Assembly (NCBI RefSeq): GCF_006345805.1
Contig: NC_043020.1
Coordinates: 9,300,001-9,364,000, forward strand
Reading direction: 5' to 3'
Source: Octopus sinensis
Taxonomy: Eukaryota
DNA length: 64,000 bases
How positions within the stretch are numbered: position 1 is the stretch's first letter; each line of letters begins with the position of its first letter. Made by a program: the position numbers and the translations under genes. Of the stretch, positions 20-63,351 are shown piece by piece. The notes beneath the pieces are model-generated. The model searched no databases. It was not told where the DNA came from and worked only from the letters and a program-made list of their open reading frames with translations.

Positions 20-245
20 TATTTCTTTACTACCCACAAGGGGCTAAACACAGAGGGGATAAACAAGGACAGACAAACGGATTAAGTCAATTATATCGAC
101 CCCAGAGCGTAACTGGTACTTATTTAATCGACCCCGAAAGGATGAATGGCAAAGTCGACCTTGGCAGAATTTGAACCCAGAACATAGTAGCAGACGAAAT
201 ACCACTAAGCATTTCGCCCGGCGTGCTAGCGATTCTGCCAGCTCA
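20..245 (-). mobile_element. SINE family B (tRNA-like head, Meta-domain-like body)
   Basis: Reverse complement of the copies at 13918 and 31211. Flanked by a 14-bp TSD cagccatagaaacc (6-19 and 246-259). Confidence 0.85.
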
Positions 246-450
246 CAGCCATAGAAACCATACCAAATCAGACTGGAATCTGGTACAGGTCTCTGGTTTA
301 GCAGTTCCAGTCAAACCATCCAACCATTGCCAGAATGGAAAGCAGTTGCTAAATGATGACGACTACCTACCAAATTCATCCGCAAAGCTTTGGTTGGCGC
401 AGCGCTATCATAGAGGACACTTGACCAATGTGTCACATTTTTTTTTCTAA

Positions 451-6387: not shown

Positions 6388-6985
6388 ATTTCATTTAGCA
6401 TTACAACCTATGGGTAAAGAAGTGTGTGTGTGTGTGCATGTGTATGTATGTGCGTGCATGCATGTGTGTGTACATGTGTAGTGCATATGTGTGTGTGTGT
6501 GTTGTGTGTGTGTGCGTATTAGGAAATAAGATGTTATTGGCAGGATTCACACTTAATATATACGTCCCTCTGCCGAGGTGGACTTTGCCTTTCATAAGTA
6601 CCAGTTAAGTACTTGAGTCATTGTAATTGCCTTACCCCCACCCCCAAATTGCTGGCCTTGTGCCAAAATTTGAAACCATTACACATCTCTCTCTCTCTCT
6701 CTTTCTCTCCATCAGTTTTTCTCTCTTTCACTCACTCTGTCTGTCTGTTTGTCCTGCCGTCTCTCCCTGTGCTTATCTGTCCCTTTTCTCTTTTTCTTTC
6801 TTTCTCTGTCTGTGTGTCTATTTTCCTCTTTCTCCCCCTCTGGTCATATCTCCATCCTCCTCTCTCTCTCTCTACTTTTCCTCTTCCCACATATTCCCCA
6901 CAATACTCCACAAATCTTCAACCCAAACCCCACTTCATTTCCCCCTTTTTTTTTGTCCCAGAATGCACCAAGTGTCCTGCCATTT

Positions 6986-10448: not shown

Positions 10449-10934
10449 AAAAAAAAAGAGATACTTTCTAGCAGAGCAACGTGGAGAGCAGGCAGAATGA
10501 TTAGCATGCAGGGTGTAATGCTTAGTGGCATTTTGTCTGTCCTAATGTTCTGGGTTCTAATTCTGCTGAGGTTGATTTAAAAAAAATTTTTTTTTTTTCC
10601 TTTTATCCTTCTGGGGTGGATAAAATAAGTACCAGCTGCGCACTGGGTCAAGTAATCGACTTACCCCCTCCCCCGAAGTTGCTGGCATTGGGACAAAATT
10701 TGATGGAATTATTCATAAAATTCTCAATAAATTTATTCATAAATTTAAAACGATTAATTACTGACAATGCTCATTAGTCTCTGGCAAAGAAATAAACACA
10801 CAAACAATACATAAATAAAAAAATAAAACCAGAGAAAAACGAAGTCATGTGACCACTGAAGTTTTAAAGATTTTTTTTTTTTGCTTTTTGCTTTCTTCTC
10901 AACCTTTTTTCTTTGTTACTTTTCTCATGTTTTT

Positions 10935-12823: not shown

Positions 12824-14632
12824 TGTGCCCATCTCGTCTCTTTCGAACTTGAGCCCCAGCACAGTGCCTCCTTCTATGGCTTCTGGCAGTTTAACAGTCA
12901 GCCCAAGTTTCTTCAGATGATCTACGACTTCCTCTGCTGTCGCCACACTTCATCTACAAGGATGTCGTTGATATACAAATTAGTCGCTTGCTCCACCTCA
13001 GCCACCTTATCCAAGACCGTCTTTAGGACCTTTGCCATAACTTTTGGTGCCAAACTCAAGCCAAACCTTAACCAAGTCAAGCAGTAAGTTCTACCCTTGT
13101 GCCTCACCAACTGGCACTTCCACAGTTTCTTGGACACATGGAGTTGCAGATAGGCCGACTTCAGGTTGACGACTGTGGATGCTTCTGTCATGCACCTCCA
13201 AACCCGGAAAGTTTCCCTGCAGGTATCTGCTGCTTCACCACCCATATGGCATGACATGTGCTCATTCAGTTCACAGAAATCAAGTACAGGTTTAACCTTG
13301 TTCTTCATGGGCTGGACCACAGCCATTAAGGGCAACACACCATTTTTCTCTTCTCCTTCCCATGGCCTCAGATCCACCTCCCTCTTGAATTCACTCCTGA
13401 CTCCTCCTTTGAGAGTGTGTTCTTAACAGCTCACCCTCCCAGAAGTATTCACCTGTCCATCGTGTGCCATCGAATTTAGCCTGGAAGTCCTTCCTCGTCT
13501 CCAATGTCACATCCATTGGCCCCTCTTTCTACAAGAGTTCCGTCGCTCTCACAACCTCCCCCCATACTTATAGCACCATACTTATAGCACATCAGTTGCA
13601 GAATTCCACTCGCTTCTCGCCTACCGTCACGCCACCCAACCGGGCAATCACGTCCATTCCCACCACTTCGTCGACAACAATCGCCTGAACCTTCAGTGCC
13701 GACTTTTGCACTATCAATTGTATTCCACTCTCGCCTCTGCAACTCACTTTCCTGCCATCTACAGTGCTCAGACATGGGTTACCGCTCCAGCTAGTCACCA
13801 TGGTTGTAGTGCAACCAGTATCCACAACTGCACAGACCTCTCTCGACCCCGCCCCACTCGAACGTTTGTTATTGGCAGTGACCGCGAGTGCGCCTCTAAT
13901 CGGTTGACGGGGTAGCTGGCAGAATCGTTAGCACGCCGGGCGAAATGCTCAGCGGTATTTCGTCTGCCGCTACGTTCTGAGTTCAAATTCCGCTGAGGTC
14001 GACTTTGCCTTTCATCCTTTCGGGGTCGATTAAATAAGTACCAGTTACGCACTGGGGTCGAAAAAATCGACTTAATCAGTTTGTCCTCTCTGTGTTTAAT
14101 CCCTTGTGGGTAGTAAAGAAATAGGTTGACGGGGTAGCTACCGGCGCAGTTGCTCCCCTCCATCCGTTTTCCTGTTTACATTGGTTAGCAATGTGTCCAG
14201 GCTGGTCACACCGGTAGCACACCACTTCTGGTTTCGGTGCCTTGCAAGTCTCTGACGATACGAGAACCCCGACACCTGAAACATGAGCCCTTCGTCATTT
14301 GCCCAGCTTCTCTTGCCTCATTCTTCTTCCCGTTAGCTTCGATTTGCCTCTACGTCTCCGTCACCATACAAACCACATTGCGTGTTGTTCTGAGGCATGA
14401 CGAGAGAACGCTCTATCAACTCACTCACCGGCATAGTGTGGATACCCGGTAACTGCTACAAACTTATTGAAATGTGATGAGGAAATCCAGTCACAAAGGC
14501 CAACCTCACAACACCCTCCATCGCCTCGCCGGAAATCCCTGCTAAAGCCACCAATCTCTTAATCTCACTTGCATAGTCATCGACCTGTTCTCCGGTCCAC
14601 CTCACGCTTCCGAGCTGAGAGATTTTTGCGCA
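12824..14632 (-). mobile_element. Degenerate Ty3/gypsy-like LTR retrotransposon internal fragment (gag-PR-RT)
   Basis: gag-like WTGEQVDDYASEIKRLVALAG (~14550-14630); zinc knuckle CYRCDQPGHIANQC (~14170-14215); protease AVVDTGCTTT (~13800-13830); RT NLKSAYLQL...FGLSLAP...LYINDILV (ORF 12922-13377). It has frameshifts and no LTR is visible. Confidence 0.85.
13918..14123 (+). mobile_element. SINE family B inserted into the gypsy remnant
   Basis: Perfect 16-bp TSD ggttgacggggtagct (13902-13917 and 14124-14139). The body gcctttcatcctttcggggtcgat...aagtaccag resembles the Meta domain of MetaSINEs as I recall it. Confidence 0.9.
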
Positions 14633-16156: not shown

Positions 16157-16359
16157 CGGGAAGCTTTATGAAAATAGACAAAAGACGAAGGCAGGTTTAC
16201 GGAAATAAACAATATATATATACATATATATTTCTTTACTACCCACAAGGGGCTACACACAGAGGGGACAAACAAGGACAAAGAGATTAAGTCGATTACA
16301 TCGACCCCAGTGTGTAACAGGTACTTAATTTATCGACCCCGAAAGGATGAAAGGCAAAG

Positions 16360-16420
<61 letters not shown>

Positions 16421-20620: not shown

Positions 20621-21036
20621 CTCACTCTCACTCTCTTACTGCACTTCATAGCTTCATCAATTCCTACTCACCAACATCCTCTTCTCTCGCCAACAAACCC
20701 CCGTTTCACTTTGGCAAAGGAGAAATACCTCACCATAACATTCTCCTCACTAAACACAACACATGCGATACAACCTCGCATTTGTAACATATTTGAGTTG
20801 GAAAAAACTGCTATAAAATCACATTACCTATGCAATTTGTAGAGAAGAGCTCCCGGGTTCAGTCCCACTGCGTGGCACTTTTGGTGAGCGTCGACCAAAA
20901 GCCTTCTGAGTTGATTTGTTGACGGAAACTGAAAGATTGTGGGGCGAGGGCGAGGGCTAGTCGATTACATCGATCCAGTGTTTCACTGGTACTTAATTTA
21001 TCGACCCCGAAAGGATGAAAGGCAAAGTCGACCTCG

Positions 21037-25840: not shown

Positions 25841-26332
25841 AAACTGAGAATGTGTGTCTTTCTGTCTGTCTGTCTGTCTGTTTCCCTAAAACGTGAGAAC
25901 TACACAACCAATTTCATTCAAATTTTACACATGCCTTACTTAAGGTCCGGAGAGTGTCATCGGCAAAAAAAATTTTTACTTTTTCCTTAGGGCGACCCCA
26001 CAGCAATATCATATCTTCTCCACTATTTCAGTATTACGTGTTAAAAGTGAAACAAAAACATCTCTCTTTTGTAATGCAGACACTTTCACTTTAATACTGA
26101 AACTATTAAAGTGAAAGTATTATATAACAGGGATGAACCATTAACAATGGAGCATTGTTTACAACGAGGTGTTATAATCTCAACACCCAGGAGGTATATA
26201 TATGATCCCCCTTTTTTTTTTAACAAACTTCATGTATTTCCATGAATTTATATTAATATACATATGTGTGTGTGTATCCATATATATATATAACAGAAAA
26301 GTCTAATTCTTCAATTGAATGTAACCGGGCAA
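25830..26332 (+). mobile_element. Non-autonomous Helitron-like element truncated at its 3' hairpin
   Basis: (gtct)n near the 5' end. The body matches 59472-59700. The 3' part aaaagtctaattcttcaattgaatgtaaccgggcaacg matches the CTAG-terminated end at 29180-29232. Confidence 0.7.
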
Positions 26333-26344
26333 CGGTTACATTCA

Positions 26345-27505
26345 ATTGCTCCTACATTATTTGGCATCTTCTCGCTGCTGCTGTCACATGCCTTTGAGAC
26401 ATCAGATGATAGAGTGTTTCTGCACAGTAGAAGTGATGGGAAACTGTTCAATCTCTCGCGTCTGCGTACCAAGACCAAAATCAGAAGCGTACTGATCAAG
26501 GAGATGCTATTTGATGATGATGCCACTCTGGTATCACACACAGAAGAAGCCCTACAAAGGCTCATCAACTATTTTGAGCAAGCATGTATCAACTTTGGCT
26601 TAGTTATCAGCCTCAAGAAGACCAACATCATGGGTCAGGCTACATCGGACATCCCAAACATATATATTGGAGACCACAGACTACAGGAGGAGGAGAAGTT
26701 TACCTATCTTGGCTCTACCGTCACCTACAACCTATCCCTTGATACTGAGCTCAATATACGCATTGGCAAGGCAGCTGCTGTGATGGCCCAACTCTCCAAA
26801 CGGGCATGGGACAACAATAAGCTGACCAAGACCACAAAACTGAAGATTTACCAGGCATGTGTACTTAGCACTCTACTGTATGGAAGTGAGACTTGGACGC
26901 CATACACACGCCAAGAGCGTCGCCTAAATAGCTTTCACCTGCGCTGCCTCCGGAAAATCCTTCGCATCAAATGGCAGAATCATGTCTCCAACAAAGATGT
27001 CCTCAAGCAAGCAGAAATACCAAGCATGTTTGCACTCCTCACACAAAGACGTCTGAGATGGCTTGGACATATTAGCCGTATGGAAGATGGCAGAATCCCA
27101 AAGGAGAGCTTGCTAGGGGCACTAGATCTGTGGGAAGACCGTTCTTGCGATACAAGGATGTTTGCAAAAGGGACATGAATGCCTGCAACATCAATATTAC
27201 CAACTGGGAAGCAGTTGCCAGCAACCGTGGAGATTGGCAACGTACCGTAAAAGAGGGAACACAAAGGAGTGACATAGAGAGAGAGGAGAAATGGAACGAC
27301 AAGAAAAGACGTCAACAAGAAACTATGACATTACAACCAGCCAGGCAAAGTATTCGCTACATTTGCGGCACCTGCCAGAGGGAGTGTTTGTCCAGGATAG
27401 GACTACACAGCCACAGCAGATGTATTAGGACATGAAATGTAAAAGCCTGACTAGATTATTTTATGCGCAACTCCATTGTCTCCCGAGACAAAAAGGATGC
27501 CATCA
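26345..27505 (+). mobile_element. 5'-truncated RTE (BovB-like) LINE, RT C-terminal half to 3' end
   Basis: ORF 26315-27178 encodes APTLFGIF...EMLFDDDATL...FTYLGS...YQACVLSTLLYGSETW...LRWLGHISRM. After a frameshift it continues RYKDVCKRDM...CGTCQRECLSRIGLHSH*. The 3' end is RTE-type (tccattgtctcccgagaca..ggatgcc). The YADD-equivalent motif is mutated to FDDD. Confidence 0.92.
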
Positions 27506-30990: not shown

Positions 30991-31210
30991 GTATGGTGTG
31001 TACATTTACGTTTCTTTCAAGCAATGGTGGCACGGGTACACATACACATGCATACACACAGTATTTCCGCTACAAAAGTAGAGTATCCTAGCTACAACAT
31101 CATGTCTCATCGGTGATATCTTCGGTGTTAACTCCAGAAAGTCTGCATCGGTTGTCACATTTTACTGTTTTTCCAGCATCTCTGTCTCTTTTGCACATCA
31201 GGTATATGAA

Positions 31211-31440
31211 GGCGGCGAGCTGGCAGAAACGTTAGCACGCCGGGCAAAATGCTTAGCGGTATTTCGTCTGTCGTTACGTTCTGAGTTCAAATTCCGCCGA
31301 GGTTGACTTTGCCTTTCATCCTTTCGGGGTCGATAAATTAAGTACCAGTTACGCACTGGGGTCGATGTAATCGACTTAATACCTATGTCTGTCCTTGTTT
31401 GTCCCCTCTATGTTTAGCCCCTTGTGGGCAGTAAAGAAAT
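31211..31440 (+). mobile_element. SINE family B, full length
   Basis: Runs ggcggcgagctggcag...aaagaaat. It splits the R4-like reading frame with a short ggtat duplication. Confidence 0.9.
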
Positions 31441-32052: not shown

Positions 32053-33552
32053 AGATTCTAGATTATCAGACAAGGAATGTTGCTCAAGGAGCTGCCTTCC
32101 AAGTCTTGTGATGTTTTCAGCCTCATGTATGTAAACTTGGTCAAGGGATGCACGTCGACACTTGATGGTTAAAAGATGTTGCCGAAGGGATATGATAAGA
32201 TATTCAATGGCATTTTGGATCGCTGTTAAGCTTCTGTCACCTTCGTTTTAGGTAGAAGCGGTCTATGTCACTGTTGATGTGGAAATTATGTGCGCTTGTT
32301 AGTATTTTTCGGGTTTTCACATCAATGGCTCAGATCTCATCAAGCAGCCCAAATGTTGGTATGAGGACTGGCATTGCAAACACATTGTGGGCCACTGTTT
32401 TATTGAATGCGGGGAGTTCTGAGGTCCAGATTTTCATCATTTGGCTGTGATATTCTTTAGTGACACGTGTTTTATATGTATGTATGTACGTGCGTGCATG
32501 CACGCACGTACGTACTTATGTACGTACGTACATAATGTATTTAAAAAGGTACTGATAGAAAAAGTATCAGGCTTTACAACAGACAATAAGTCCTGGGGTC
32601 GATTCGTTCGACTAAAAATTCTTCAAGGCGGTGCCCCAGCATGGCCGCAGTCTAATGACTGAATCAAGCAAAAAGATATAAGAAAAAGAAGATAAAAAAA
32701 CTAGCGTATTTCATGGCATATAAAACGCACTTTTTTCCGACCCCAGGAAAATATCTCCCTCCTCCCCCCAACCCCGTCATTTGCGCAAAACCTGGGGTTG
32801 TATTACGTGATGCACACTAAAATCCTAGCGCGTCGGACAAAATGCCGCTAAGCATTTACGTTCTGAGTTCAAATTCTGCCGAGGTCGACTTTGCCTTTCA
32901 TCTTTTCAGGGTCGATGAAATAAACACCAGTGAAACTCTGGGGTCGATATCATAGACTAGCCCCTGCTCCCGCCCAATTCCAGACCTTGTGCCTACAGTA
33001 GAAAAGATTATTATTATTATTATTGATTTGACTCAGGTTCGTTCTTATTCCTGGTAGCAGGTCACCACCCGTAACCCTAGGTATCCATCCACAAGCTTTC
33101 AATAGTCTTTTGAGGGCTTAAAAACTTCCTCATAATCTTTCCTGTCTCTTACAGGTAAACTTTTCGTAGAAGCTCCATCACCACCACCACACTACTGCTG
33201 CTGCTGCTACTACTACTAGTACTTATTTATTTATTTATTGTTGCCCCTGAAAAGGCGCTCCAGAAATCGGGGTTGTCTACATATACGCGTGCGTCTTTTT
33301 ATGCCATCAAAATACAGAAACCATTTTGTTGCTCCACTTTTTCTGGACTATTTGTTTCTAAGGCGATACGAGTCGTCTCCCTTGCAACTTCGGGCTTTAA
33401 GCGACATCACTGGAATGGTTTACTATGAAGCAGCGATCTTCTGGAAAACATTTTCAACAGCAAAAACGCAAAAAGAAAGGAAAGAAATTTCTTTCTTCTC
33501 TTATAGAATTCCATTCACAGTGAAAATGAGATAGTATAAGGATATTGATCTA

Positions 33553-40196: not shown

Positions 40197-41054
40197 CACT
40201 GATAGAATAAATACTAGACTTAAAATAAGGGTTAGGGTTTAGGGTTAGGGTCGATTCATTAAACTAAACCTTTAAACAAGCAAAAGGTAAATGATGTGTG
40301 TATGTGTGTGTGTTTGTGCGTGTGTGAGTGAGTGTCTGTTGAAGTTTTATGGGGGAGGGGACCAGTGGATTACATCGATCCCAGTGATTCAGTGGTACTT
40401 AATTTATCGACCCTGAAAGGATGAAAGGCAAAATTGACCTTGATGGAATTAGAACTCAGGACGTAGTGACGGGCGAAATACTCAGCATTTTGTCCGGCGT
40501 GCTAACGATTCTGCCAACTCGCTGCCTTGAAATATTGAAATATTAAATATATGAAATTATTTGTATACCGGAATAATAGCAGAATATCAGGACATAAGAA
40601 TGTTCAAAAATTTTGGAATATCCGAAAGAAGGGATGGCACTGACCTGTGGAACATTGTGTACTTGAGGATTTTGGGTTAATCGACCAAAACACGGCAGAA
40701 AGAAACACATGGCATCAATTTGATTCTGACCACTGGTTCCTGAAAAGATTGGCTAAAAACAGAAGATATAGATTTAGAAGGGCGGAGTAGAAGAGGGATA
40801 GTGTGAGGATGGGGAGAGTTGTTTAGAGAGAATGAAGGGGGAGGGAAGGAAGGAAGGAAGGAGGGAGGGGAAGATAAAAAGAAGATGTGTAGAGAGAAAG
40901 ATTGTGATTCATGCAAGACAATCTTTCGCTAAAAGTCTGTGACGTCATGAGTCAATGTGTGTCACTGTGTCCATCTGTTCGACGGAGCTGAACTGTCAAA
41001 TACACACTCACACACACACACACTCACTCACAATTGACATCATATACTAATACC

Positions 41055-41275
41055 TATTTCTTTACTACCCACAAGGGGCTAAACACAGAGGGAACAAACA
41101 AGGACAGACAAAGAGGTTAAGTCGATTACATCGACCGCAGTTCGTAACTGGTACTTAATTTATCGACCCCGAAAGGATGAAAGGCAAAGTCGACCTCGAC
41201 GCAATTTGAACTCACAACGTAACGCAGACGAAATACCGCTAAGCATTTCGACCGGCGTGCTAACGTTTCTGCCAG
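41055..41275 (-). mobile_element. SINE family B
   Basis: Family B sequence with a 6-bp TSD aatacc (41049-41054 and 41276-41281). Confidence 0.88.
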
Positions 41276-44222: not shown

Positions 44223-44804
44223 GTGGAAATTTTGTCCTGAGTTCAAATACAGTTGAGGTCAATGTTGCCTTTCCTCCTTTCGGGGGGTTGATAAAATAAG
44301 TACCAGTTGCTCATTCCAATCAGATTTCTCCTCCTCCCCCACCTCCCCCCAAATTTCAGGCCTTGTGCTAAAATTAGAAAGGAAGCAGTTGCTGGCAGGG
44401 CAAGAAGGCGAAAGGTGTCCTCAAAGTAGCAAGGAACAATTGCAACAGAACGGACTCAATTAGATGCAATGAAGGTGTGAGAGAGAGAGAGCGAGAGAAA
44501 GAGAAAGCAAGAGAGAGAGAGAGAGAAACAAAGAGGGAGAGAGAGAAAAGTAGATTTATATATATATATATATACAGATTCAGATAAATATGGTACTTAA
44601 GTTAAAGGCACCAGAATTTGGTATGGTATTATCCATATCAATCAAATGGGGTGATTATAATCAAAATAAGCAACAAGGATATCCAAGGTAGTGTAGTACA
44701 ATCGTTTCATGCTACTTCATTTAATTAAACAATTTAAGTATTACATCAGTTTTAAAATGTAGAGCACTCTTCAGCCGCATATGGAATTTTAAAAAAATTA
44801 AATA

Positions 44805-46313: not shown

Positions 46314-46857
46314 GACATTTGTGCTCTTCCTATGGCATAAGGAGTATTTTTCTCAACTTTCTAGTTATATACATATATATACCTTCGAAAAGCGGAGTAG
46401 ATAAAATAGGGGACAACTGATGAAGGGAATGTTCTTTATTTAATGGAGAATTAGGCCTTGATAATAAATGTTCCCAGCATGAACTGAAAAAAAGATTTTA
46501 TGGCGTCTTCTGCGCCGCTTGGTAGGTCTTTCATTACAGATGGATCCCTATAAATTCAGAGATGGGTGCAATAGTAAAGATTTACCCGATAGCTGAGGGG
46601 ATAGGTAGTGACCATGTGGTAGACTGGGTGGGCTGAAGGTAGCGGTGGGGAGTATTGTACCCTCAGTCGTTTATACATCACGGAAACGCTGGGATTAGTT
46701 TAGGGTTGAGGAGGGGCTTAGGGGATTAGATTAGGGTCGAAGTTTGAGACAGACTTAATCATACACGCAAGCGTACGCACACGGTAACACACAAACACAC
46801 ACACTTGCAAATATATGTGTGTGTGTATGTTATATACATACAGATGGATATATGTAG

Positions 46858-46868
46858 ACAGATACATT

Positions 46869-46936
<68 letters not shown>

Positions 46937-46962
46937 TGAAAGAGAGAGATAGACAGACAGAC

Positions 46963-47014
<52 letters not shown>

Positions 47015-47044
47015 TGATTGATAGATAGATAGATAGATAGATAC

Positions 47045-47081
<37 letters not shown>

Positions 47082-47152
47082 CACATAGATAGATAGATAG
47101 ATAGATACATACATACATACATACATAGATAGATAGATAGACACATAGACAC

Positions 47153-47189
<37 letters not shown>

Positions 47190-47190
47190 C

Positions 47191-47225
<35 letters not shown>
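46858..47225. repeat. Complex (GATA)n array, target of the Tx1 insertions
   Basis: (gata)n with variant units gacacata, gattgata and gaca. The same variants reappear at 50369-50474. Confidence 0.95.
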
Positions 47226-47227
<2 letters not shown>

Positions 47228-50020
47228 TGTTTCTTTATTAGCCACATAGGGCTGCACACAGATAGAACAAATTACAAGGTAGAGCTTTTCTTTTGAAGGT
47301 TTAAAAAAAAAAAAAAAAAAAAAAGGAAGGGGGAGTTTCGATCAAAAGGGATCGTAAAAGGAGAGAAAGAGGACAAAAAAAAGGGGGGTTAAAAAAAAAA
47401 AAAAAAAGGGGGGGGGGAGAGGAAAAAAAAAAATTGATCAATAGGGATCGTTATCACAGAAATGTCAATATGAAGTGTAAAGGGGAGGACAGGTGAGGTT
47501 TACCCGTGGAAAGAAAAGCCTGCGGAAAAGACCACGGTAACCTCGGTCAATGAAGTCACATTATATTTCTTTTTTTTTTTTTTTTTTTTTGCAAATAAGC
47601 AACTCTCTGTTTTCGATTTCTGGTTCATAGGACTATGCTCAAGGTGGCTTCGTCATTCATACGTGCCATTCTTGCTACATTCACCCATCTTTTTTTAAAA
47701 CATTCGCTAGACAAAACTTGCCTCTCTACTCTCACTTTCCTTTTCATGGTACTTGAAGAAGTTGATGAGAGATTGACCAGAGAGGAAAGTGTTTGTCTCC
47801 AATCCTTTCAGACGCGTCCACCAGATACATTCTTTCGCCATAGCCACAAGGATGATGAAAATAGCTCTTCCTTCCCGTTTGAAGGAAGGAGGCGTGACAA
47901 TATTGACGATAGACTCAGCTGATAAACCGACTCGTCCCACACGTGACAGCAGTTGTTCGACATAAGCCACAGGTCGGAAATTGTTGGACACTGAACGAGT
48001 GCGTGCAGAACGGTTTCGTCGCTCTGACCGCATCTCGGGCAGGTCGGCCCCGTGTTTCTCGAGCCGTGTCTGTAGAGCTTATCCCGAACGGGTAGCGCTT
48101 CTCGGTAGCACTGCCAGGCCAGGGATCTCTGGAAGTTGTCCATGGGCCCTGGCCCGAAAGTCGTCCCGAACAGGCGGGTCAGGTACTCCTCGTCGACGTC
48201 CAGGTTCGCCCCGAGCTCGTCGTCGTACCTCCCCTCCACTAAACCCCTATAGAATGCTTTGGTTGTGTTGAAGTCACTTAAGGTCGCCCAGGACGGCAGA
48301 GTTGCTTGAGAGCAACGCGACACTCGCGGTGCCATTCGCCCTTCCTCGGCCTCTTTTGATCCACGACTGCAGTTCGGTCATGGAGACGAGCTGCGGGAAA
48401 GCGTGCCTCACAAACGGCGACCACACCTGTTCACCGTCGTCTACATAGAGCCAGAGATGTCGCAGTCTCAGCGCGTGTCTGCGCATCATCAACCACGGCA
48501 TGCCCAGCCCTCCTTTTAACGGGTGTTGACAGCAAATGGATCGCCTGACCATCGGGACGCATCCTTTCCACAAGAAGCGAAAGAGGATGCGTTGTAGTTT
48601 TGGTTTGGTAGGGTCGGGACAAGGTACGACGGTCAGGCGGTAGTAGATGACGGACGCGATGTACGTGTTCGCCACCCTCCGCTCGACCTTTTAGGGACAG
48701 TTTCCTCTCGGCCCATTGCCGGCGAGAGTGACCACCCTACTCGTTATCTCGTTCCAGTTCTTCTCCACTTGGAGGTCCGGACCAAACCAGACCCCGAGCA
48801 AATCAACCGGGCCGTCGGTCCAGCGTCCCACGACGGAGGCGCTGGTGGACGGCATGGGCTTGCTTCTCCAGGTGCCTAGTCGCAAGCCCACTGACTTTTC
48901 CCGGTTGATTTTCGCTCTCCTGTCACCGCTTCGTAGTTTTTCAGTGTCTCGCCGACCAGCTCGATGTGCTCGTGGCTAGACACTATGACGGTGACGTCGT
49001 CCGCGTATGCAGACACGCTCGTCCCGCATCCCAATTCTCGCGGGATGCCCCTTAGAGTCGCCAGCTTCCGCAGTAGTGGCTCAGAGTCAATACGTATAGA
49101 AGCGCCGAGAGGGGGCATCCCTGACGGACCGAACGTGCAATGTCGAAAGGTCTCGATAGATGTCCATTTACGCGAATTACCGAACGGATGCCTCTGTACA
49201 AGGCAGCTATCCAGCCGCGGAAGACGGGACCGAAACCAGCCGTTCTCAGGACTGCCTCCAAGTATCGATGGTCTACCCTATCAAAGGCTTTTGATTGATC
49301 CAAGTTGATCAGGGCCCCACCCATGCCAGGTTCGTTAACTACCCGTCTATGATGTAGCGCATCAGATGGAGGTTGTCATGGATGGTCCCCTGGCACGGCG
49401 CATGTTTGCGCCTTGTCGACCAGTTTCTCGATGACAAGCGCCAACCTCTTGGCTAGCACCTTGGCAAAATTTTCAAGTCTGCATTAAGCAGAGTGATGGG
49501 CCTAAAGTTATCTATTACATTTCCCTTGTTTAGATCTTTCTTCAGCAGTGTTACGGCTCCTCGGCTCACAAAACCAGGAATGCTCCGTTTTGCTGCCAGT
49601 TGCAGTACACCGCCGCCAAGAGATCTCCAAACAAGTCTGGCATACAATTGTAAAGCTCGTAGGGTAGACCATCCAAACCCGGTGATTTGTCCCTCGAGCA
49701 TTCTGCCATCGCTTCCCGCACTTCGCCGCCGTGATGGCACCTTCGCAGCACCCTGCCTTTCTTGTCGAGAGTCGTGGTAGGCTATGTAGGTAGGCACTGA
49801 AGTCCACCCTACGTTCTTGCCTCCACTCGTTACAACAGTCGGGCAAAATGCTGCTGAAAGGCCTCACACATTTTACTTGGCTCGAGCAATTCGCGCCCCT
49901 GTTCATCTACTGTGACCGAATGGTGGCTTTGTTGCCCTGTTGCGCCTCTGCCACCCGGGCCTCTCTCGCGGCTCCAACACCTTCGTTCCTTAGAGCACGC
50001 ATCCTAGCTCTGACAGCACA
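47226..50020 (-). mobile_element. Tx1-clade LINE copy 1, 5'-truncated and frameshifted
   Basis: 3' UTR plus ORF2 fragments (FRPITLLNADLK, LDQSKAFDRVDH, VRQGCPLS, AYADDV, zf-RVT CPRC...H...C). Highly similar to copy 3. Confidence 0.92.
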
Positions 50021-50024
50021 TAGA

Positions 50025-50368
50025 TATGTTCTTTATTAGCCACACAGGCTGCACACAGACAGGACAAATTACAAGGTAGAGCTTTTCTTTTGGGGGTAAA
50101 AAAAGAAGGGGGTTGGTTTTCGATCAAAAGGGATCGTAAATGGAAAGAAAGAGGACAAAAAAAAAGGGGGGATAAAATAAAATTTTTAAAAAAAGGGGGG
50201 GGTGAGGAAAAAAAAGGGAAAGAAAAAAAATTGATCAATAGGGATCATTATCACAGAAATGTCAATATGAAGTGTAAAGGGGAGGACAGGTGAGGTTTAC
50301 CCGTGGAAAGAAAAGCCTACGGAAAAGACCACGGTAACCTCGGTCAATGAAGTCACATGTTATATTTC
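50025..50368 (-). mobile_element. Tx1-clade LINE copy 2 (3' UTR only)
   Basis: Same 3' terminus as copies 1 and 3. It is truncated at the internal A/T run and flanked by TAGA units on both sides. Confidence 0.9.
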
Positions 50369-50408
50369 TAGATAGATAGACACATAGATAGAGAGAGAGA
50401 AAGAGATT

Positions 50409-50476
<68 letters not shown>

Positions 50477-50843
50477 TGTTTCTTTATTAGCCACACAGGG
50501 CTGCACACAGACAGGACAAATTACAAGGTAGAACTTTTCTTTTGGGGGTAAAAAAAAAGGGGGTTTGGTTTTCGATCAAAAGGGATCGTAAAAGGAAAGA
50601 AAGAGGACAAAAGGGGGGGGGGGTAAAATTTTTTTTAAATAAATAAAAGGGGGGGGGGAATTGATCAATAGGGATCGTTATCACAGAAATGTTAATATGA
50701 AGTGTAAAGGGGAGGATAGGTGAGGTTTACCCGTGGAAAGAAAAGCCTACGAAAAAGACCACGGTAACCTCGGTCAATGAAGTCACATGTTATATTTCTT
50801 TTTTTTTTGCAAATAAGAAACTCTCTGTATTAATTTTTACGGT

Positions 50844-53800
50844 TCATAGAATCATAGTCAAGGTGGCTTCGTCATTCATACGTGCCATCCTTGCTACATT
50901 CACCCATCTTTTTTTAAAACATTCACTAGACAAAACTTGCCTCTCTACTCTCACTTTCCTCTTCAAGTAATACTTGAAGAAGTTGATGAGAGATTGACCA
51001 GAGAGGAAAGTGTTTGTCTCTAATCCTTTCAGGCGCGTCCACCAATACATTCTTTGGGTGATAAAAATAGCTCTTCCTTCCCGCTTGAAGGAAGGAGGCG
51101 TGACGATATTAACGATAGACTCGGCTGATAAACCGACACGTCCCACACGTGACAGCAGTCGTTCGACATAAGCCCACAGGTCGGAGATTGTTGGACACTG
51201 CACGATTGCGTGCAGAGTGGTTTCGTCGCTCTGCCCGCATCTCGGGCAGGTCGGCCCCGTGTTTCTCGAGCCATGCCTATAGAGTTTATCCCGAACGGGT
51301 AGCGCTTCTCGGTAGCACCGCCAGGCCAGGGATCTCTGGAAGTTGTCCATAGGTCCCGGCCCGAATGTCGTTTCAAACAGGCGGGTCAGGTATTCCTCGT
51401 CGACGCCCAGGTTTGCCCCAAGATCGTCGTCGTACCTCCCCTCCACTAATCCCCTATAGAATGCTTTGGTTGTGTTGAAGTCACTCAAGGTCGACCCGGG
51501 ACGGCAGAGTTGCTTGAGAGCAACGCGACACTCGCGGTGCCATTCGCCCTTCCTCGGCCTCTTTTTGATCCACGACTGCAGTTCGGTCATGGAGACGAGC
51601 TGCGGGAACGCGTGCCTCACAAACGGCGACCACACCTGTTCACCGTCGTCTACATAGAGCCGGAGATGTCGCAGTCTCAGCGCGTGTCTGCGCATCATCA
51701 ACCATGGCATGCCCAGCCCTCCTTTTAACGGGTGTTGACAGCAAATGGATCGCCTGACCATCGGGACGCATCCTTTCCACAAGAAGCGGAAGAGAATGCG
51801 TTCTAGTTTGGTGATGGTAGGGTCGGGACAAGGTACGACGGTCAGGCGGTAGTAGATGATGGACGCGATGTACGTGTTCGCCACCTCCGCCCGACCTTTT
51901 AGGGACAGTTTCCTCTCGGCCCATTGCCGGGCGAGAGTGACTACCCTACTCGTTATCTCGTTCCAGTTCTTCTCCATTTGGAGGTCCGGACCGAACCAGA
52001 CCCCGAGCAACTCAACCGGGCCGTCTGTCCAGCGTCCCACGACGGAGGTACTGGTGGACGGCATGGGCTTGCTTCTCCAGGTGCCGAGCCGCAAGCCTAC
52101 TGACATTTCCCGGTTGATTTTTCCTCCTGTCACCGCTTCGTAGTCTTTCAGTGTCTCGCCGACCAGCTCGATGTGCTCGTGGCTTGACACTATGACGGTG
52201 ACGTCGTCCGCGTATGCAGACACGCTCGTCCCGCATCCCAATTCTCGCGGGATGCCCCTCAGAGTCGCCAGCTTCCGCAGTAGTGGCTCTAGAGTCAATA
52301 CGTATAGAAGCGCCGAGAGGGGGCATCTCTGACGGACCGAACGTGCAATGTCGAAAGGTCTCGATAAATGTCCATTTACGTGAATTACCTAACGGATGCC
52401 TCTGTACAAGGCAGCTATCCAGCCGTGGAAGACGGGACCGAAACCAGCCGCTCTCAGGACTGCCTCCAAGTATCGATGGTCTATCCTATCGAAGGCTTTC
52501 GATTGATCCAAGTTGATCAGGGCCCCACCCATGCCAGGTTCCTTAACTACTCTGTCTATGATATAGCGCATCAGATGGAGGTTGTCATGGATGCTCCGGC
52601 CCGGCACGGCGCACGTTTGTGCGTTGTCGACCAGTTTCTCGATGACAAGCGCCAACCTCTTGGCTAACACCTTTGTCAAAATTTTCAGGTCTGCATTGAG
52701 CAGAGTGATTGGTCTAAAGTTATCTATAATGTTCCCCTTGTTTGGATCTTTCTTCAGCAGCGTTACGGATCCTCGACTCACAAAACCGGGTATGCTCCCG
52801 TTTTGCTGTCAGTTGCAGTATACCGCTGCCAAGACGTCTCCAAACAAGTCTGGCATGCAATTGTAAAACTCGTAGGGCAGACCATCCAAACCCGGCGATT
52901 TGTCTCTCGAGCATTCTGCCATCGCGTCCCGCACATCCGCCGCCGTGATGGCACCTTCGCAGCACTCTGCCTCTCTTGCCGAGAGTCGTGGTAGGCTGTG
53001 CAGGTAGGCACTGAAGTCCACCCTGCGTTCACGCTCGCCACTCGTCCCGTACAGTCGGGCAAAGTGCCGCTGAAATGTCTCGCACATCTTGCTGGGCTCG
53101 AGCAATTCGCGCCCTTGTTCGTCTACCAGAGACCGAATGGTGGCTTTGTTGCCCTGCTGCGCCTCCGCCACCCGGGCCTCCCTCGCGGCTCCAACACCTT
53201 CCATCCTTAGAGCCCGCATCCTAGCCCTGACAGCACACACTTCGTGTTTGGCGTTGAAGTGCTGGTCAAGGGCCAACCTCGCCGCTAAAACGTCGGATGT
53301 GATGCCGCTTCTTATTGCCTCTTCTAACTTCTTAACTAACTCACCCTCCACTCTATTTCTATCTACGGCTAGTGCCTTGCTATATCTAATTGCTTCCGCT
53401 TTTACTGCTCTCTTGAGGGCGAACCACCATTTGTTGTTGACAATAGCTCCCGTTAAAGCCCTTTTTACTAACGTGTTGATTCTGTCTCTGAAAACCTGCC
53501 TGGACGGGAAAGATGCGTTCAGTTTCCAGTAACCAGGACCCTGTCTATGTGCCTTATCTAAGTCTAGCGTACACGTCACGAATTTGTGATCCGTGTAGCT
53601 GACTGTGTGGAATTGTGGACATCCTAAGTTATCCCTGTCTACTGTCCTACACAGTATCCTATCTAGATAAGATCTCGACGACCCACTGCGGTTGCTCCAT
53701 GTCCACGTTGGTGCATTTGGGTGGTCGAGTCGGTACCTGTCAGACAGTTGGAATCGTCTGAGCAGGTCTCTGAGGCATTTGCATCCCCTTCTGTTTTTGT

Positions 53801-54266
53801 CTCTCCCCACATAGTCTAGATGCGTGTCCAAGGTAGCATTCCAATCCCCCACTAAAAGTAAAGGACGAGACGTTCCCAGGAATACTTCTAGACGTCGAAA
53901 GAAATCCGGCCGACCTGTTAAAGGCGGTGCGTAGACTGATACGAGTCGAAAAGCGCACCCATTGCTGCCATCGACATCCAGAACGACCAGTCTACCCTCC
54001 GGGTCTACGAATATCGTCTTGACTTCGAGATCCAGGCTCTTGTGAAAAAGTACCGCGGTGCCACTACCGCCCATCCTCGGCAGACAGGGAGCAAAATAAA
54101 TGTTAAACTGTCCGCCAAACATGGACTTTAGGGCCCGTGGCTCGTGGAGTCTGGTCTTACTTATGGCTATGATTCCCAAATCGTGTGACTTGATGTCATT
54201 TAGGAGGTATCCTTGTTTCCAAGGAGACCCCAAGCCACGCGCATTCACACAACCGATCTTGACCAT
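50844..54266 (-). pseudogene. Tx1 ORF2 (APE endonuclease, reverse transcriptase, zf-RVT), 1140 codons with two premature stops
   Basis: ORFs 52809-54266, 52389-52781 and 50844-52298 are all in one frame. APE motifs: GCVNARGL, VSVYAP, GDWNA, SYLDRI, TDHK. RT motifs: RPITLLN, LDQSKAFD, YADD. The stops are TGA (52809-52811; TGG in copy 1) and TAG (52389-52391; TCG in copy 1). Confidence 0.92.
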
Positions 54267-54316
54267 GTTTCTATTGGGGTGTGTGCTTTAAAACACAAAA
54301 AGGAAAGTACAGAGAG

Positions 54317-54601
54317 TTACTTACTTGTGTCGAAAGTTTTGGCTTCCTCGTCCTTTGATGTGTCTTGGAGGAGGTTTTTATAGAGTTTTTGTGAAAGGTA
54401 TTTTTGGAACACCCCAACCGCATTTGGAAAGAGGGCTTTGAGTGTGTGGTGTTGTGTTTGTGTGATGTGTAGTATTTTGATGTGTTTGGGTGGTGTAGTG
54501 TGTGGATGGTTGTTAGTTTTGAAGTCATCTTCACAGATGTTTGTGTGGGCTGTGATGTACTCCATGAGTTTGGAGTCTTTGGTGTCTATCGCTGATAGCA
54601 T
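54317..54601 (-). CDS. 94-codon ORF upstream of Tx1 ORF2, probably the C-terminal remnant of ORF1
   Basis: Same strand as ORF2 and ending 50 nt before the ORF2 ATG. The start lies 5 nt from the 5' (GATA)n flank. No recognisable domain. Confidence 0.45.
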   Translation of the reverse strand: MLSAIDTKDSKLMEYITAHTNICEDDFKTNNHPHTTPPKHIKILHITQTQHHTLKALFPNAVGVFQKYLSQKLYKNLLQDTSKDEEAKTFDTSK

Positions 54602-54606
54602 TGTGT

Positions 54607-54663
<57 letters not shown>

Positions 54664-55204: not shown

Positions 55205-55837
55205 CCGTTTTGTCTGCCTTCACAGACGCCTCCGATGTTTCTAGGCTTTTTTTCTTTTTTTTTCAAATTTTTTAGTGTTTTTTGTCTTATTTCGTTTTTC
55301 TCATAAAATCATGCAACACCACACTTATGTACGCACACACACACACATACATACACATAGATACACATACACACACGTACGCATATACATAAACATACAC
55401 ACATGTACATACACACACGCACGCACACACAAACATACACAGATACACATACACACACATATGCACATACACACACATATACACATACATACACACACAT
55501 ACGCACATACATTAACACACACACACACACATACACAACGCACACACATGTACATTCACACATGACTGTATGCGTACACGCACACATACAGTTTATATAT
55601 ATATATATATATAATCTTTTACTTGTTTTAGTCATTGGACTGCGGTCATGCTGGGGCACTGCCTTAAAAGGTTTTAGTTGAACAAATCGACTCAGAGAAT
55701 AATTAACTTATTGTATCGTCACATTTGCCGAACCGCTGAGTTATGGAGTCGTAAACAAACCAATGCCGGTTGTCAAATGTCGGGGCGGATGCGCACACAC
55801 ACATATACACAAACACACACTATTCTTAAGCAAGAAT

Positions 55838-56270
55838 AGGCGCAGGAGTGGCTGTGTGGTAAGTAGCTTGCTTACGAACCACATGGTTCCGGGTTCAGTC
55901 CCACTGCGTGGCACCTTAGGCAAGTGTCTGCTACTATAGCCTGGGGCCGACCAAATCCTTGAGTGGATTTGTAAGCCTAGTACTTATTCTATTGGTCTTT
56001 TACGCCGAACCGGTAAGTTACGGGGACGTAAGCACACCAACATCGGTTGTCAAGCGATGATGGGGGCAAACACAGACACAGAAACATACACACACACACA
56101 CACACACATATACGACGGTCTTCTTTCAGTTTCCGTCAACTAAATCCACTCATAAGGCTTTGGTTGGTCTGAGGCTGTAGTAGAAGACACTTGTCCAAGG
56201 TGCTATGCAGTGGGACTGAACCCGGAACCATGCAGTTGGTAAGCAAGCTACCTACCACACACACATAACC
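55838..56270. mobile_element. Convergent fusion of two partial family A SINEs
   Basis: A plus-strand head (55838-55970) is joined at ttt/gt to a minus-strand copy lacking its tail (55968-56270). Confidence 0.75.
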
Positions 56271-57423: not shown

Positions 57424-57830
57424 CTCTTTACTCTTTTACTTGTTTCAGTCACTTGACTGCGGCCATGCTGGAGCACCGCCTTTAGTCGAGTAAATCGACC
57501 CCGGGACTTATTCTTTGTAAGCCCAGTACTTATTCTATCGGTCTCTTTTTGGCGAACCGCTAAGTGACGAGGACGTAAACACACCAGCATCGGTTGTCAA
57601 GCAATGCTAGGGGGACAAACACAGACACACAAACACATACACACACACTTATATATATATATATGTACGACAGGCCTCTTTCAGTTTCCGTCCACCAAAT
57701 CCACTCAGAAGGCATTGGTCGGCCCGAGGCTATAGCAGAGGACACTTGCCTAAGATGCCACGCAGTGGGACTGAACCCAGAACCATGTGGTTGGTAAGCA
57801 AGCTACTTACCACACAGCCACTCCTGCGCC
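57424..57830 (-). mobile_element. SINE family A, full length
   Basis: Complete reverse-complement copy. Confidence 0.9.
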
Positions 57831-58184
57831 TTTTTAAAATTTTTTTTCTTTTATTAAATTCTGATATAATCGTAATTTGCACCATCTGAAATTTATTCGT
57901 AGAAAATTTCATTTACAAATACTTATTTTGCTGGAAGTTATGTGGAAATAAAGTCAGTGGCGGGATGAGGGTGGGCACTCGTGTAGGTATGCCCAATTTT
58001 GTCCCATCTTCCGTCATTTCCTTCAGCCAGTTTTCGCTTCCAAAACACCCGTCTTCCCCATATATAAGCTCTAATTCTTAATTAACCATATTCATCCCTT
58101 CCACAAAACACTGACACTTTATAAATATTCTCCTGCTGCCGTCTGCTCCTGTTTTGGTTATATTTCCTTCTTCCTTTTCGGTCA

Positions 58185-61923: not shown

Positions 61924-62286
61924 TATATATAGAGAGATGAGAGAGAGACTTGCAAGATTAATTGCTTATTGCTCTCTCTTTCGCAGTTCTTCTAAAAATA
62001 TGTTCGCTTTATGCATTAAGTATATCGCCCTGAATTGTTTTTCTCTCTCGGAATATAACATTGATAATATATGGCGAAAGTAAAGAGTACGTACACCTGG
62101 TGTTTAGGGTTTCGATTTGGGGTTAGGGTTTTTGTTACACCGAAAACGGGTGGTGTACGTATTCTTTACCTCCGTCATTATATATATATTACGTATTATA
62201 TAACGTAAATAGGTGGCCTATGCGTATAATAATTGTAATGAGCTTATGTATACAGAACTCAATTGCACTTGGTCTGTTTAATACCT

Positions 62287-62515
62287 ATTTCTTTATTACC
62301 CACAAGGGACTAAACACAGAGCGGACAAACAAGGACAGACATAGGTATTAAGTCGATTACATCGACCCCAGTGCGTAACTGGTACTTAATTTATCGACCC
62401 CGAAAGGATGAAAGGCAAAGTCGACCTCGGCGGAATTTGAACTCACAACGTAACGCAGACGAAATACCGCTAAGCATTTCGCCTGGCGTGCTAACGTTTC
62501 TGCCAGCTCTCCGCC
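62287..62515 (-). mobile_element. SINE family B, full length
   Basis: 17-bp TSD tggtctgtttaatacct (62270-62286 and 62516-62532). Confidence 0.92.
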
Positions 62516-63351
62516 TGGTCTGTTTAATACCTGCAATGATCTGTGTCTCTGTGTGACCTCGCCTTTTCTCTTCACCCCAGGTCGGCTCTGACTGTGTAGA
62601 CTTATAATCCAAGACGTCCCAACCATAACCATTCCGCCTCTTTTTTTTTTTTTCAAGATGGTGAAGTCTGGTTTGGTGGGAGAACAGCTACTATTTCTAA
62701 CAATCCAAATGACCACGTAGGGGCTCCTTTTGCTCACTAATTATTAGAAATTCTCTCTGAATACGACTGTGTAAAATAGTGTGTGTGTGTTTTTAAACAT
62801 CATAATTTACGTTGCTTGTTCTGAATTCTATAGAAAATCTGTAGAGATAAGCTTATCTAAACATTTCTAATATACGATAGAATGAACAGGATTTAATCAC
62901 AACAATTGTTTCTGTGCGTTGATAACAATTGTCAGTCGCTGGTGAATGGCATCGAGAGTACTGCTGGATCACATCTAGCTTCCCATTGTTTTATACTCAT
63001 TTATATATATATATATAAGTAGTTGAATGAATTATCCTAGTATGGATAATTCTGTTAACCGATACCCGGGTAGCAAATTCACGTCAGAAAAACACGGTTG
63101 AAGCCAAGGGTAGAGATCTCGTGCTTTCGTGTGGAAATTTGTGTTTTTTTTTTATACAAATAAATGAAAAAATGGAGTTGAACGACGATTTAACAAAATT
63201 CCTTTATTCTCAACATATGTTTCGAAGACTGCATATTCCTAATTTCGAAGGAATAAGGGGTGCATTATGCCGCCTTCTCATCAGGAAAGACAAGGAACTT
63301 ATGTCAGCATCATGACGAACAAAAACTTTTAGATGACTGCCCACACGGAGT

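What the first reader, a model, noticed from the sequence alone, without database searches (positions are those of the whole stretch)
50475..50540. The abundant family B (Meta-like) SINE carries the 3' end of this Tx1 LINE: candidate SINE-Tx1 partnership
Seen in the sequence (plus-strand orientation): the Tx1 end tatgtttctttattagccacacagggctgcacacagacaggacaaattacaagg aligns with the family B end tatttctttattacccacaagggactaaacacagagcggacaaacaagg (62286 onward; also 20, 16231, 41055). By eye about three quarters of ~55 nt match, and the termini coincide. Neither has a poly-A tail, and both can form a small terminal hairpin (agcc-ctgtgt-ggct versus ccc-cttgt-ggg). Established: SINEs take their 3' ends from partner LINEs (usually L2, CR1 or RTE), while mammalian L1 uses relaxed poly-A recognition. 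Inference: an L1-superfamily Tx1 element acts as a stringent-type partner for one of the most numerous SINEs here.
Basis: partly seen in the sequence, partly recalled or inferred. Interest (0 to 1): 0.85.

Follow-up and report, generated by a model that had tools for sequence, protein, structure and literature searches.

The report
SINE tail shared with Tx1-like LINE
A common short retrotransposon (SINE) here ends in about 50 bases clearly borrowed from the 3' end of an L1/Tx1-like LINE that sits in GATA repeats, an ordinary kind of SINE-LINE link in an unusual LINE group, but their insertion sites differ, so this LINE is not shown to copy the SINE.

Summary
The last ~50 nt of SINE family B match the last ~50 nt of the LINE at 50477-50528 (about 80% identity, both at the element terminus). 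None of 20,000 dinucleotide shuffles reach the score. In the whole window, the only non-SINE matches to the SINE tail are the three 3' ends of this LINE.

The LINE has one ORF (APE endonuclease, RT, zf-RVT, two in-frame stops). Its best solved relative is human L1 ORF2p. It sits head-to-tail three times in the only (GATA)n tracts of the window, so it is a site-specific, Tx1-like member of the L1 superfamily. No named Tx1 reference could be used.

The partnership claim is only partly supported:
- SINE B copies are dispersed, with TSDs of up to 16 bp. Five of six begin with GGT, and none is in or ends with (GATA)n, so the insertion signatures do not agree.
- Tail identity is only about 80%.
- The proposed hairpins are no better than in shuffled sequence.

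Most likely SINE B took its tail from a LINE of this lineage and is, or was, mobilised by a member of it. The copies here are probably relatives of the driver.

SINE links to Tx1 (crocodilian SINEU) and stringent L1-clade pairs (maize, Chlamydomonas) are already published. This is a new member of a known kind, of moderate interest.

The parts
50477..54606 (-). LINE copy C, apparently full length: 340-nt 5' leader, one ORF, ~370-nt 3' UTR, no poly-A
   Evidence: Both ends abut (GATA)n tracts.
50847..54266 (-). ORF2-like reading frame of copy C (~1140 codons in one frame, two in-frame stops at 52809-52811 and 52389-52391): APE endonuclease, RT, zf-RVT
   Evidence: Frame analysis. Pfam Exo_endo_phos, RVT_1 and zf-RVT. 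Best PDB hit is human L1 ORF2p, E = 2e-58.
50477..50528 (-). 3'-terminal ~50 nt of LINE copy C shared with SINE B (the finding)
   Evidence: Alignment and shuffles, window-wide rank, blastn.
50369..50476 (.). (TAGA)n/(TATC)n microsatellite between the 3' end of LINE copy C and the 5' end of copy B
   Evidence: TRF, sequence.
50027..50369 (-). LINE copy B: heavily 5'-truncated, 3' UTR only, with the same tail at 50027-50076. Followed by TATCT (50026-50022) and then copy A.
   Evidence: 85.5% identical to copy C. Tail score 38.
47228..50021 (-). LINE copy A: 5'-truncated inside the ORF, 90.6% identical to copy C, with the same tail at 47228-47279
   Evidence: Tail score 40.
46855..47227 (.). Long (TAGA)n-rich microsatellite directly after the 3' end of LINE copy A
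54607..54662 (.). (GATA)14 directly at the 5' end of LINE copy C, showing the LINE lies inside a GATA tract rather than only carrying one as a tail
62286..62518 (-). SINE B copy, full length. LINE-like tail at 62286-62337. 16-bp TSD GGTATTAAACAGACCA.
20..250 (-). SINE B copy with 14-bp TSD GGTTTCTATGGCTG
13914..14123 (+). SINE B copy with TSD GGTTGACGGGGT(AGCT)
16229..16360 (-). SINE B copy, 5'-truncated, in TA-rich DNA (TSD ambiguous)
31210..31440 (+). SINE B copy with a short TSD starting GGTAT
41055..41275 (-). SINE B copy with TSD GGTATT

Best explanation
SINE family B is a composite retroposon of about 231 nt. It has a tRNA-like head and a body that other SINE families in the window share. 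Its last ~50 nt were taken from the 3' end of a LINE of an L1-superfamily, Tx1-like, site-specific lineage.

Shown here: the tail is homologous to the 3' end of the LINE at 47228-54606, and both are terminal.

Inferred: the SINE RNA is recognised through this tail by the ORF2 protein of a LINE of that lineage. It is then copied into nicked DNA by target-primed reverse transcription (stringent-type trans-mobilisation).

The three LINE copies in the window belong to a (GATA)n-inserting family. They are most likely relatives of the true driver rather than the driver itself, because their insertion signature and about 20% of tail positions differ from those of the SINE.
For: - Tail homology: score 45, with 0 of 20,000 shuffles reaching it. 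The three LINE ends are the only non-SINE matches in 64 kb. The alignment stops 2-4 nt from both termini.
- The tail is an integral feature of the LINE family. All three copies (85-91% identical to each other) carry the same variant.
- The direction LINE to SINE is favoured. The same SINE head and body occur with a different tail in at least eight other copies. The end type 'stem, then A(A)ATAAAG, no poly-A' recurs in a LINE relative with 42% amino-acid identity, whose 8-bp stem has z = -3 and a G-C to A-T compensatory change.
- LINE class: Pfam domains, L1 ORF2p as best solved relative, and site-specific head-to-tail arrays.
- In an NJ tree of the RT region it falls with a 5S-rDNA-specific family rather than with human L1, at 59% bootstrap. 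RT-only scores are 171-182 bits against 123 for human L1.
- The longer SINE TSDs (14-16 bp) resemble the 12-13 bp TSD of the related site-specific LINE family.
- Divergence within SINE B (pairwise 88-96%) and between LINE copies (86-91%) is of the same order.
- The literature reports recently active L1-Tx1 families in Octopus vulgaris (PMC13282606).
Against: - The insertion signatures differ. None of six SINE B copies lies in or ends with (GATA)n. Five of six TSDs start with GGT (P about 1.5e-9 from the trinucleotide frequency). All LINE ends abut (GATA)n.
- Tail identity is about 80%, lower than expected for a currently active pair (my own knowledge of published pairs).
- The hairpins in the window's LINE and SINE tails are not better than in shuffles.
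- Only six SINE copies and one LINE locus were available.
- The LINE copy here has two in-frame stops.
- No named Tx1 reference was available, and the tree support is weak.
Confidence: 0.6

Rival explanations
1. This very (GATA)n-associated LINE family is the driver of SINE B. Target choice is set mainly by base pairing between the nicked target and the RNA just downstream of the recognised tail. For the LINE that is (UAUC)n. For the Pol III read-through SINE transcript it is GGUWU from the parental TSD. One enzyme would then give two insertion signatures.
For: The tails are shared and co-terminal. The LINE continues as ...GAAACA(TATC)n and the SINE as ...GAAATA|GGTWT, which is a strong, heritable junction signature. 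Published work on RTE elements suggests that 3' microsatellites of the template can steer integration sites (PMC6007223).
Against: In studied site-specific LINEs the endonuclease mainly sets the target (cited in PMC4494074 and PMC6007223). Crocodilian SINEU shares its target with Tx1-Mar (PMC4494074), whereas none of six SINE B copies is in (GATA)n. Tail identity is about 80%. There is no direct test.
Confidence: 0.22
2. The shared tail is a relic. SINE B took it from a Tx1-like LINE long ago, but its recent amplification depends on another LINE clade or on a different recognition element.
For: The insertion signatures are discordant. About 20% of tail positions differ. The literature reports recently active RTE, CR1 and Dong-R4 LINEs in Octopus vulgaris (PMC13282606), and other LINE fragments lie in the window.
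Against: No other LINE 3' end in the window resembles the SINE B tail (background scores 26 or less). The SINE tail is well conserved among copies. TSDs of 14-16 bp fit L1-type integration better than CR1/L2-type integration (established knowledge).
Confidence: 0.12
3. The transfer went the other way: the LINE family picked up its terminal ~50 nt from a SINE B transcript by template switching.
For: Direction cannot be read from a two-family comparison. The similarity stops abruptly upstream of CCTTGT.
Against: The same SINE body occurs with other tails. Distant LINE relatives have the same type of end: a stem, then AAATAAAG, and no poly-A.
Confidence: 0.05
4. The resemblance is a chance or low-complexity match.
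For: Both tails are T/G-rich and contain the common AATAAA-like motif.
Against: None of 20,000 dinucleotide shuffles reaches the score, z = 10-12. The three LINE ends rank directly after the SINE copies in the whole window. The matches are at the termini.
Confidence: 0.01

Closest known systems
UnaL2 / UnaSINE1 of eel and other stringent-type LINE-SINE pairs (Kajikawa and Okada 2002, as cited in PMC4494074 and PMC4824008)
   Same: The SINE carries the terminal few tens of nt of a LINE 3' UTR, and recognition of that tail by the LINE protein explains trans-mobilisation.
   Different: Those pairs are L2, CR1 or RTE clade, their tails end in short tandem repeats, and mobilisation was shown by experiment. 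Here the LINE is L1/Tx1-like, the SINE has no repeat tail, and nothing has been tested.
SINEU mobilised by Tx1-Mar LINEs in crocodilians (Kojima 2015, PMC4494074)
   Same: A SINE is linked to LINEs of the site-specific Tx1 group.
   Different: That link rests on a shared target (Mariner-N4_AMi) and shared U1/U2 heads, and all SINEU have poly-A tails. Here the link is a shared unique 3' tail, and the target is not shared.
Stringent-type L1-clade pairs: maize/sorghum SINEs with LINE1-1_ZM, and Chlamydomonas SINEX-3_CR with L1-1_CR (Ohshima 2012, PMC3472496)
   Same: An L1-clade LINE has a specific conserved 3' end that a SINE also carries.
   Different: Those are in plants and a green alga and end in poly-A, and the maize/sorghum stem-loop is supported by compensatory changes. 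Here it is an animal, with no poly-A and no statistical support for the stem in the window's own sequences.
Microsatellite-specific Tx1-group LINEs: Kibi (TC)n, Koshi (TTC)n, and crocodilian Tx1 families in (TTCC)n/(TTTC)n (PMC4494074)
   Same: An APE-type LINE of the L1/Tx1 group is found inside one type of microsatellite, in tandem.
   Different: The repeat unit here is GATA/TATC. Only one locus (three insertions) was seen, so specificity is inferred rather than counted genome-wide.

Membership tests
LINE-SINE pair with a shared 3' tail (stringent type) | Significant sequence similarity confined to the 3' ends of both elements | tested here: met
   Score 45, with 0 of 20,000 shuffles reaching it. 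The LINE ends are the only non-SINE hits in the window. There is no similarity upstream of CCTTGT.
LINE-SINE pair with a shared 3' tail (stringent type) | SINE and LINE show the same insertion signature (TSD pattern or target) | tested here: not met
   The LINE lies in (GATA)n tracts in head-to-tail arrays. The SINE is dispersed, five of six TSDs start with GGT, and none is in (GATA)n. The sample is small.
LINE-SINE pair with a shared 3' tail (stringent type) | Conserved stem-loop in the shared tail, supported by compensatory changes | tested here: inconclusive
   The window's LINE and SINE stems (4-5 bp) are no better than in shuffles. An 8-bp stem with a compensatory change is supported only in a relative with 42% amino-acid identity.
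LINE-SINE pair with a shared 3' tail (stringent type) | Overlapping periods of activity | tested here: inconclusive
   SINE copies are 88-96% identical pairwise and LINE copies 86-91%. There are too few copies for an age profile.
LINE-SINE pair with a shared 3' tail (stringent type) | Trans-mobilisation of the SINE tail by the LINE protein | not testable with these tools
   This needs a retrotransposition assay.
L1 superfamily, Tx1 group | N-terminal APE-type endonuclease, RT, and a C-terminal Cys/His motif in one ORF2-type protein, with L1 ORF2p as the nearest characterised relative | tested here: met
   Pfam Exo_endo_phos, RVT_1 and zf-RVT. Human L1 ORF2p at E = 2e-58 over residues 4-857, against 1e-16 for R2.
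L1 superfamily, Tx1 group | Site-specific insertion. Among APE-type clades only Tx1 and R1 hold site-specific LINEs (PMC6007223). | tested here: met
   Three independent insertions lie in the only (GATA)n tracts of the window, and copy C is flanked by them on both sides. This is one locus only. The family at 42% identity has a fixed target and tandem arrays, and the 38% family appears to be in tandem.
L1 superfamily, Tx1 group | RT phylogeny places the element with Tx1 references rather than with L1 proper | tested here: inconclusive
   In an NJ tree of 389 RT columns it groups with a 5S-rDNA-specific (Mutsu-like by target) family and others, apart from human L1, but at only 59% bootstrap. No named Tx1 sequence was available.
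   No reference sequence of the domain was available. I showed only that the central region is shared with other SINE families in the window. Published RepeatMasker-based surveys describe tRNA-Core and tRNA-Deu as the main octopus SINE types (PMC8967140).
tRNA-derived SINE | Head recognisably derived from a tRNA, with A and B boxes | tested here: inconclusive
   ARAGORN found no tRNA in the window. The Rfam search of one copy gave no tRNA match. A B-box-like GAGTTCAAATTCC is visible by eye in the consensus.

The most novel reading that the evidence does not exclude
One Tx1-like enzyme serves both elements, and its target is chosen by the RNA rather than by the endonuclease alone. The LINE RNA continues after the recognised tail as (UAUC)n and so lands in (GATA)n tracts. 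The Pol III read-through SINE RNA continues as GGUWU, inherited from the parental target-site duplication, and so lands at GGTWT sites across the genome. A site-specific LINE would thereby spread a dispersed, high-copy SINE.
Probability: 0.2. Interest if true: 0.65.

Novelty: new member of a known kind. Interest (0 to 1): 0.4.

Why it matters
SINEs make up a large share of octopus-type genomes, but the surveys I read leave most of them unclassified and name no LINE partner (PMC13282606, PMC8967140). A tail derived from a Tx1-like LINE names a candidate driver lineage for one abundant family. It would also add an animal case to the few L1-clade LINEs that recognise a specific 3' end rather than poly-A (PMC3472496).

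The mismatch between a microsatellite-bound LINE and a dispersed SINE with the same tail offers a concrete way to ask how much of a site-specific LINE's targeting comes from the protein and how much from the RNA 3' end.

Tried and rejected
- Exact-pattern scan of the JGI metagenome contigs for the shared tail, to find better-matching LINE subfamilies: 0 hits.
- Names for the homologous proteins, to classify the LINE: none were informative.
- A literature look-up of the assembly that holds the closest relative (69% identity, P0001): nothing found. That contig stops before the 3' end.
- tRNA origin of the SINE head: no ARAGORN hit and no Rfam tRNA hit.
- The hairpin claim was rejected as evidence. 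Folding z-scores are mostly near 0, and short stems next to AATAAAG are common in shuffles.
- By eye the window LINE tail resembled the tail of the 42%-identity family, but the match is not significant (991 of 10,000 shuffles), so I did not use it as sequence homology.
- SINE B tail against that family: weak (172 of 10,000).
- Other LINE fragments in the window (26315-27500 on the plus strand, 58196 onward on the minus strand): their ends do not match the SINE B tail.
- ORF1 in the window's LINE: no homologue of the relatives' ORF1 was found.
- The 3' boundary of the L006 family could not be fixed, because the contig end repeats its start.

Full report
**What is at the coordinates.** The stretch 50475-50540 is the 3' end of a LINE on the minus strand. 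Copy C runs from 54606 to 50477. It has a 340-nt leader and a single reading frame from 54266 to 50847, about 1140 codons with two in-frame stops. A ~370-nt 3' UTR follows, rich in homopolymer runs, and there is no poly-A.

The frame encodes an APE-type endonuclease, a reverse transcriptase and a zf-RVT Cys/His domain. No homologue of the relatives' ORF1 is present.

Two more copies lie head-to-tail downstream on the same strand:
- Copy B (50369->50027) is only the 3' UTR and is 85.5% identical to C.
- Copy A (50021->47228) is 5'-truncated inside the ORF and 90.6% identical to C.
- B and A are separated by just TATCT.

All three LINE copies end in ...CCTTGTAATTTGTCCTGTCTGTGTGCAGCCCTGTGTGGCTAATAAAGAA(A)CA. 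Six copies of SINE family B end in ...CCTTGTTTGTCCCCTCTGTGTTTAGCCCCTTGTGGGTAGTAAAGAAATA. They lie at 20-250, 13914-14123, 16229-16360, 31210-31440, 41055-41275 and 62286-62518.

The best local alignment covers 47 SINE and 50 LINE nt with 38 identities and one 3-nt gap, and it stops 2-4 nt from both termini. It scores 45. Dinucleotide shuffles of either partner never exceed 35 in 20,000 trials each.

When the SINE tail is slid over both strands of the 64 kb, the six SINE copies come first (75-105). The three LINE ends come next (45, 40, 38), and everything else is at 26 or below. So the similarity is homology. It is also a property of the LINE family, not of one copy.

- First, copies C and A run straight into (TATC)n on their own strand (50476-50369 and 47227-46855), and copy B is followed by TATCT. 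The 5' end of copy C also abuts (GATA)14 at 54607-54662. These three tracts are the only GATA-type microsatellites in the window.
- Second, the small hairpins (AGCC-CTGTGT-GGCT and GCCC-CTTGT-GGGT) are not better than chance. Folding z-scores are between -0.05 and -0.56 for four of five tails. A 4-5 bp stem next to the AATAAAG is found in 8-32% of shuffles.

**What the LINE is.**
- Its best solved relative is human L1 ORF2p, E = 2e-58 and collinear from the endonuclease to past the RT. R2 proteins reach only 1e-16.
- Three insertions in one microsatellite type, in tandem, without poly-A, is the behaviour of site-specific LINEs. Among APE-type clades such elements are reported only in Tx1 and R1 (PMC6007223). 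Microsatellite-specific Tx1 families are already known: Kibi, Koshi and crocodilian families (PMC4494074).
- Relatives found in the protein collection behave the same way. A family with 42% identity (loci L002, L004, L005) has an ORF1 with a zinc knuckle. It has a fixed target with a 12-13 bp TSD, forms tandem arrays and has no poly-A.
- A family with about 26% identity (L007) interrupts a 5S rRNA gene, as published for the Tx1-clade element Mutsu.
- In a neighbour-joining tree of 389 RT columns, the window's LINE forms a 100% clade with the 69%, 42% and 38% relatives. That clade falls with the 5S-specific family and others, apart from human L1, but at only 59% bootstrap.

I therefore call it an L1-superfamily, Tx1-like, site-specific LINE. 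Formal placement with named Tx1 references could not be done.

**Does it drive SINE B?** The tail homology says that SINE B took its 3' module from a LINE of this lineage. Two observations favour that direction:
- The same SINE head and body occur in the window with a different tail.
- The 42% relative also ends in a stem followed directly by AAATAAAG with no poly-A. Its 8-bp stem has z about -3 and a G-C to A-T compensatory change between copies.

The accepted indirect proof of a partnership is a shared insertion signature (PMC6007223, PMC4494074), and that is absent here. SINE B copies are dispersed and have TSDs of up to 16 bp (14-16 bp in three copies). None lies in or ends with (GATA)n. 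Five of six TSDs begin with GGT, mostly GGTAT or GGTTN, which is far from chance (P about 1.5e-9).

The tails also differ at about one position in five, while copies within each family differ by 4-15%.

My reading is that SINE B depends, or depended, on a member of this LINE lineage, and that the (GATA)n-bound copies in the window are relatives of the driver (confidence about 0.6).

A minority reading (about 0.2) is that this very family is the driver. In that case the target would be chosen by pairing with the RNA just after the tail: (UAUC)n for the LINE, and GGUWU from the parental TSD for the SINE. That reading would be the more interesting one, and it is testable.

**Comparison with the literature.**
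- SINE-LINE tail sharing is textbook for L2, CR1 and RTE.
- For the L1 clade it has been described in maize/sorghum and in Chlamydomonas (PMC3472496).
- For the Tx1 group, crocodilian SINEU were linked to Tx1-Mar by a shared target and shared heads, with poly-A tails (PMC4494074).
- In the papers I could search, I found no SINE with a unique 3' tail shared with a Tx1-type LINE, and no LINE partner named for octopus-type SINEs. Repbase could not be consulted.
- Surveys of bivalve SINE partners mention Nimb, CR1-Zenon and I, not Tx1.

This is therefore a new member of a known kind. It is of moderate interest and needs a genome-wide census to settle.

**Limits.**
- There was one 64-kb window, with six SINE copies and one LINE locus.
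- The source genome is not in the searchable collections. The best protein hit is 69% identical, and there was no DNA pattern hit.
- The 'Meta-like' label and the tRNA origin of the head were not confirmed.

Noticed in passing
window 46855-54662: Three copies of the same LINE lie head-to-tail inside the only (GATA)n/(TATC)n tracts of the window. This points to a GATA-microsatellite-specific Tx1-like LINE, a repeat unit not among those named in the papers I read: (TC)n, (TTC)n, (TTCC)n and (TTTC)n.
   Followed up: partly
window: 5' junctions of the SINE B copies at 250, 13914, 31210, 41275 and 62518: Five of six SINE B target-site duplications start with GGT (GGTAT or GGTTN). This is a strong junction signature, P about 1.5e-9, not seen at the LINE ends.
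   Followed up: partly
window 6569-6681, 8494-8562, 9176-9322, 10483-10700, 20959-21036, 32856-33010, 40364-40527, 44238-44380: Other SINE copies share head and body with family B but carry other tails, several of the form CCCCNCCCCCAAATTGCTGGCCTTGTGCCAAAATTTGAAAC. That form resembles the 3' UTR of the distant Tx1-like LINE family in L002/L004/L005 (CCCCTCCCCAAAAACTTCAAGGCCTTGTGCC). The local score is 26, reached by 18 of 10,000 shuffles, so it is suggestive only and was noticed post hoc.
   Followed up: partly
window 57430-57834 (minus strand); related copies at 55835-55960, 55999-56261 and 57546-57816: A different tRNA-like SINE family (head GGCGCAGGAGTGGCTGTGTGGTAAG...) occurs in several direct and inverted copies next to an RTE/CR1-like LINE C-terminus that ends at 58196.
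   Followed up: no
window 26315-27500 (plus strand): A fragment of another LINE: a weak match to the end of the RT domain (below Pfam's cut-off) plus an RRLRWLGH-type C-terminus. Its 3' end does not resemble the SINE B tail.
   Followed up: partly
window 54267-54606 (minus strand): The 340-nt leader of LINE copy C holds only an open frame of about 94 codons starting 5 nt from the element's 5' end. No homologue of the relatives' ORF1 is present, whereas ORF1-sized frames of 478-782 aa lie upstream of ORF2 in the relatives (a zinc knuckle was found in the 642-aa one).
   Followed up: partly
L007 1545-1590 and 7186-7914: A relative with about 26% identity, from a JGI metagenome, interrupts a 5S rRNA gene near position 45 (Mutsu-like). 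Its 3' UTR holds two copies of a sequence that looks tRNA-like by eye, but ARAGORN does not call it.
   Followed up: partly
L004 2700-2760 and 9140-9200; L005 2700-2760 and 9130-9190; L002 5715-5740 and 10140-10180: The 42%-identity LINE family sits in tandem arrays at one fixed target (TSD GAAGACTAGAAGG) inside a repeated host sequence of unknown nature. Its terminal 8-bp hairpin shows a compensatory G-C to A-T change between copies.
   Followed up: partly
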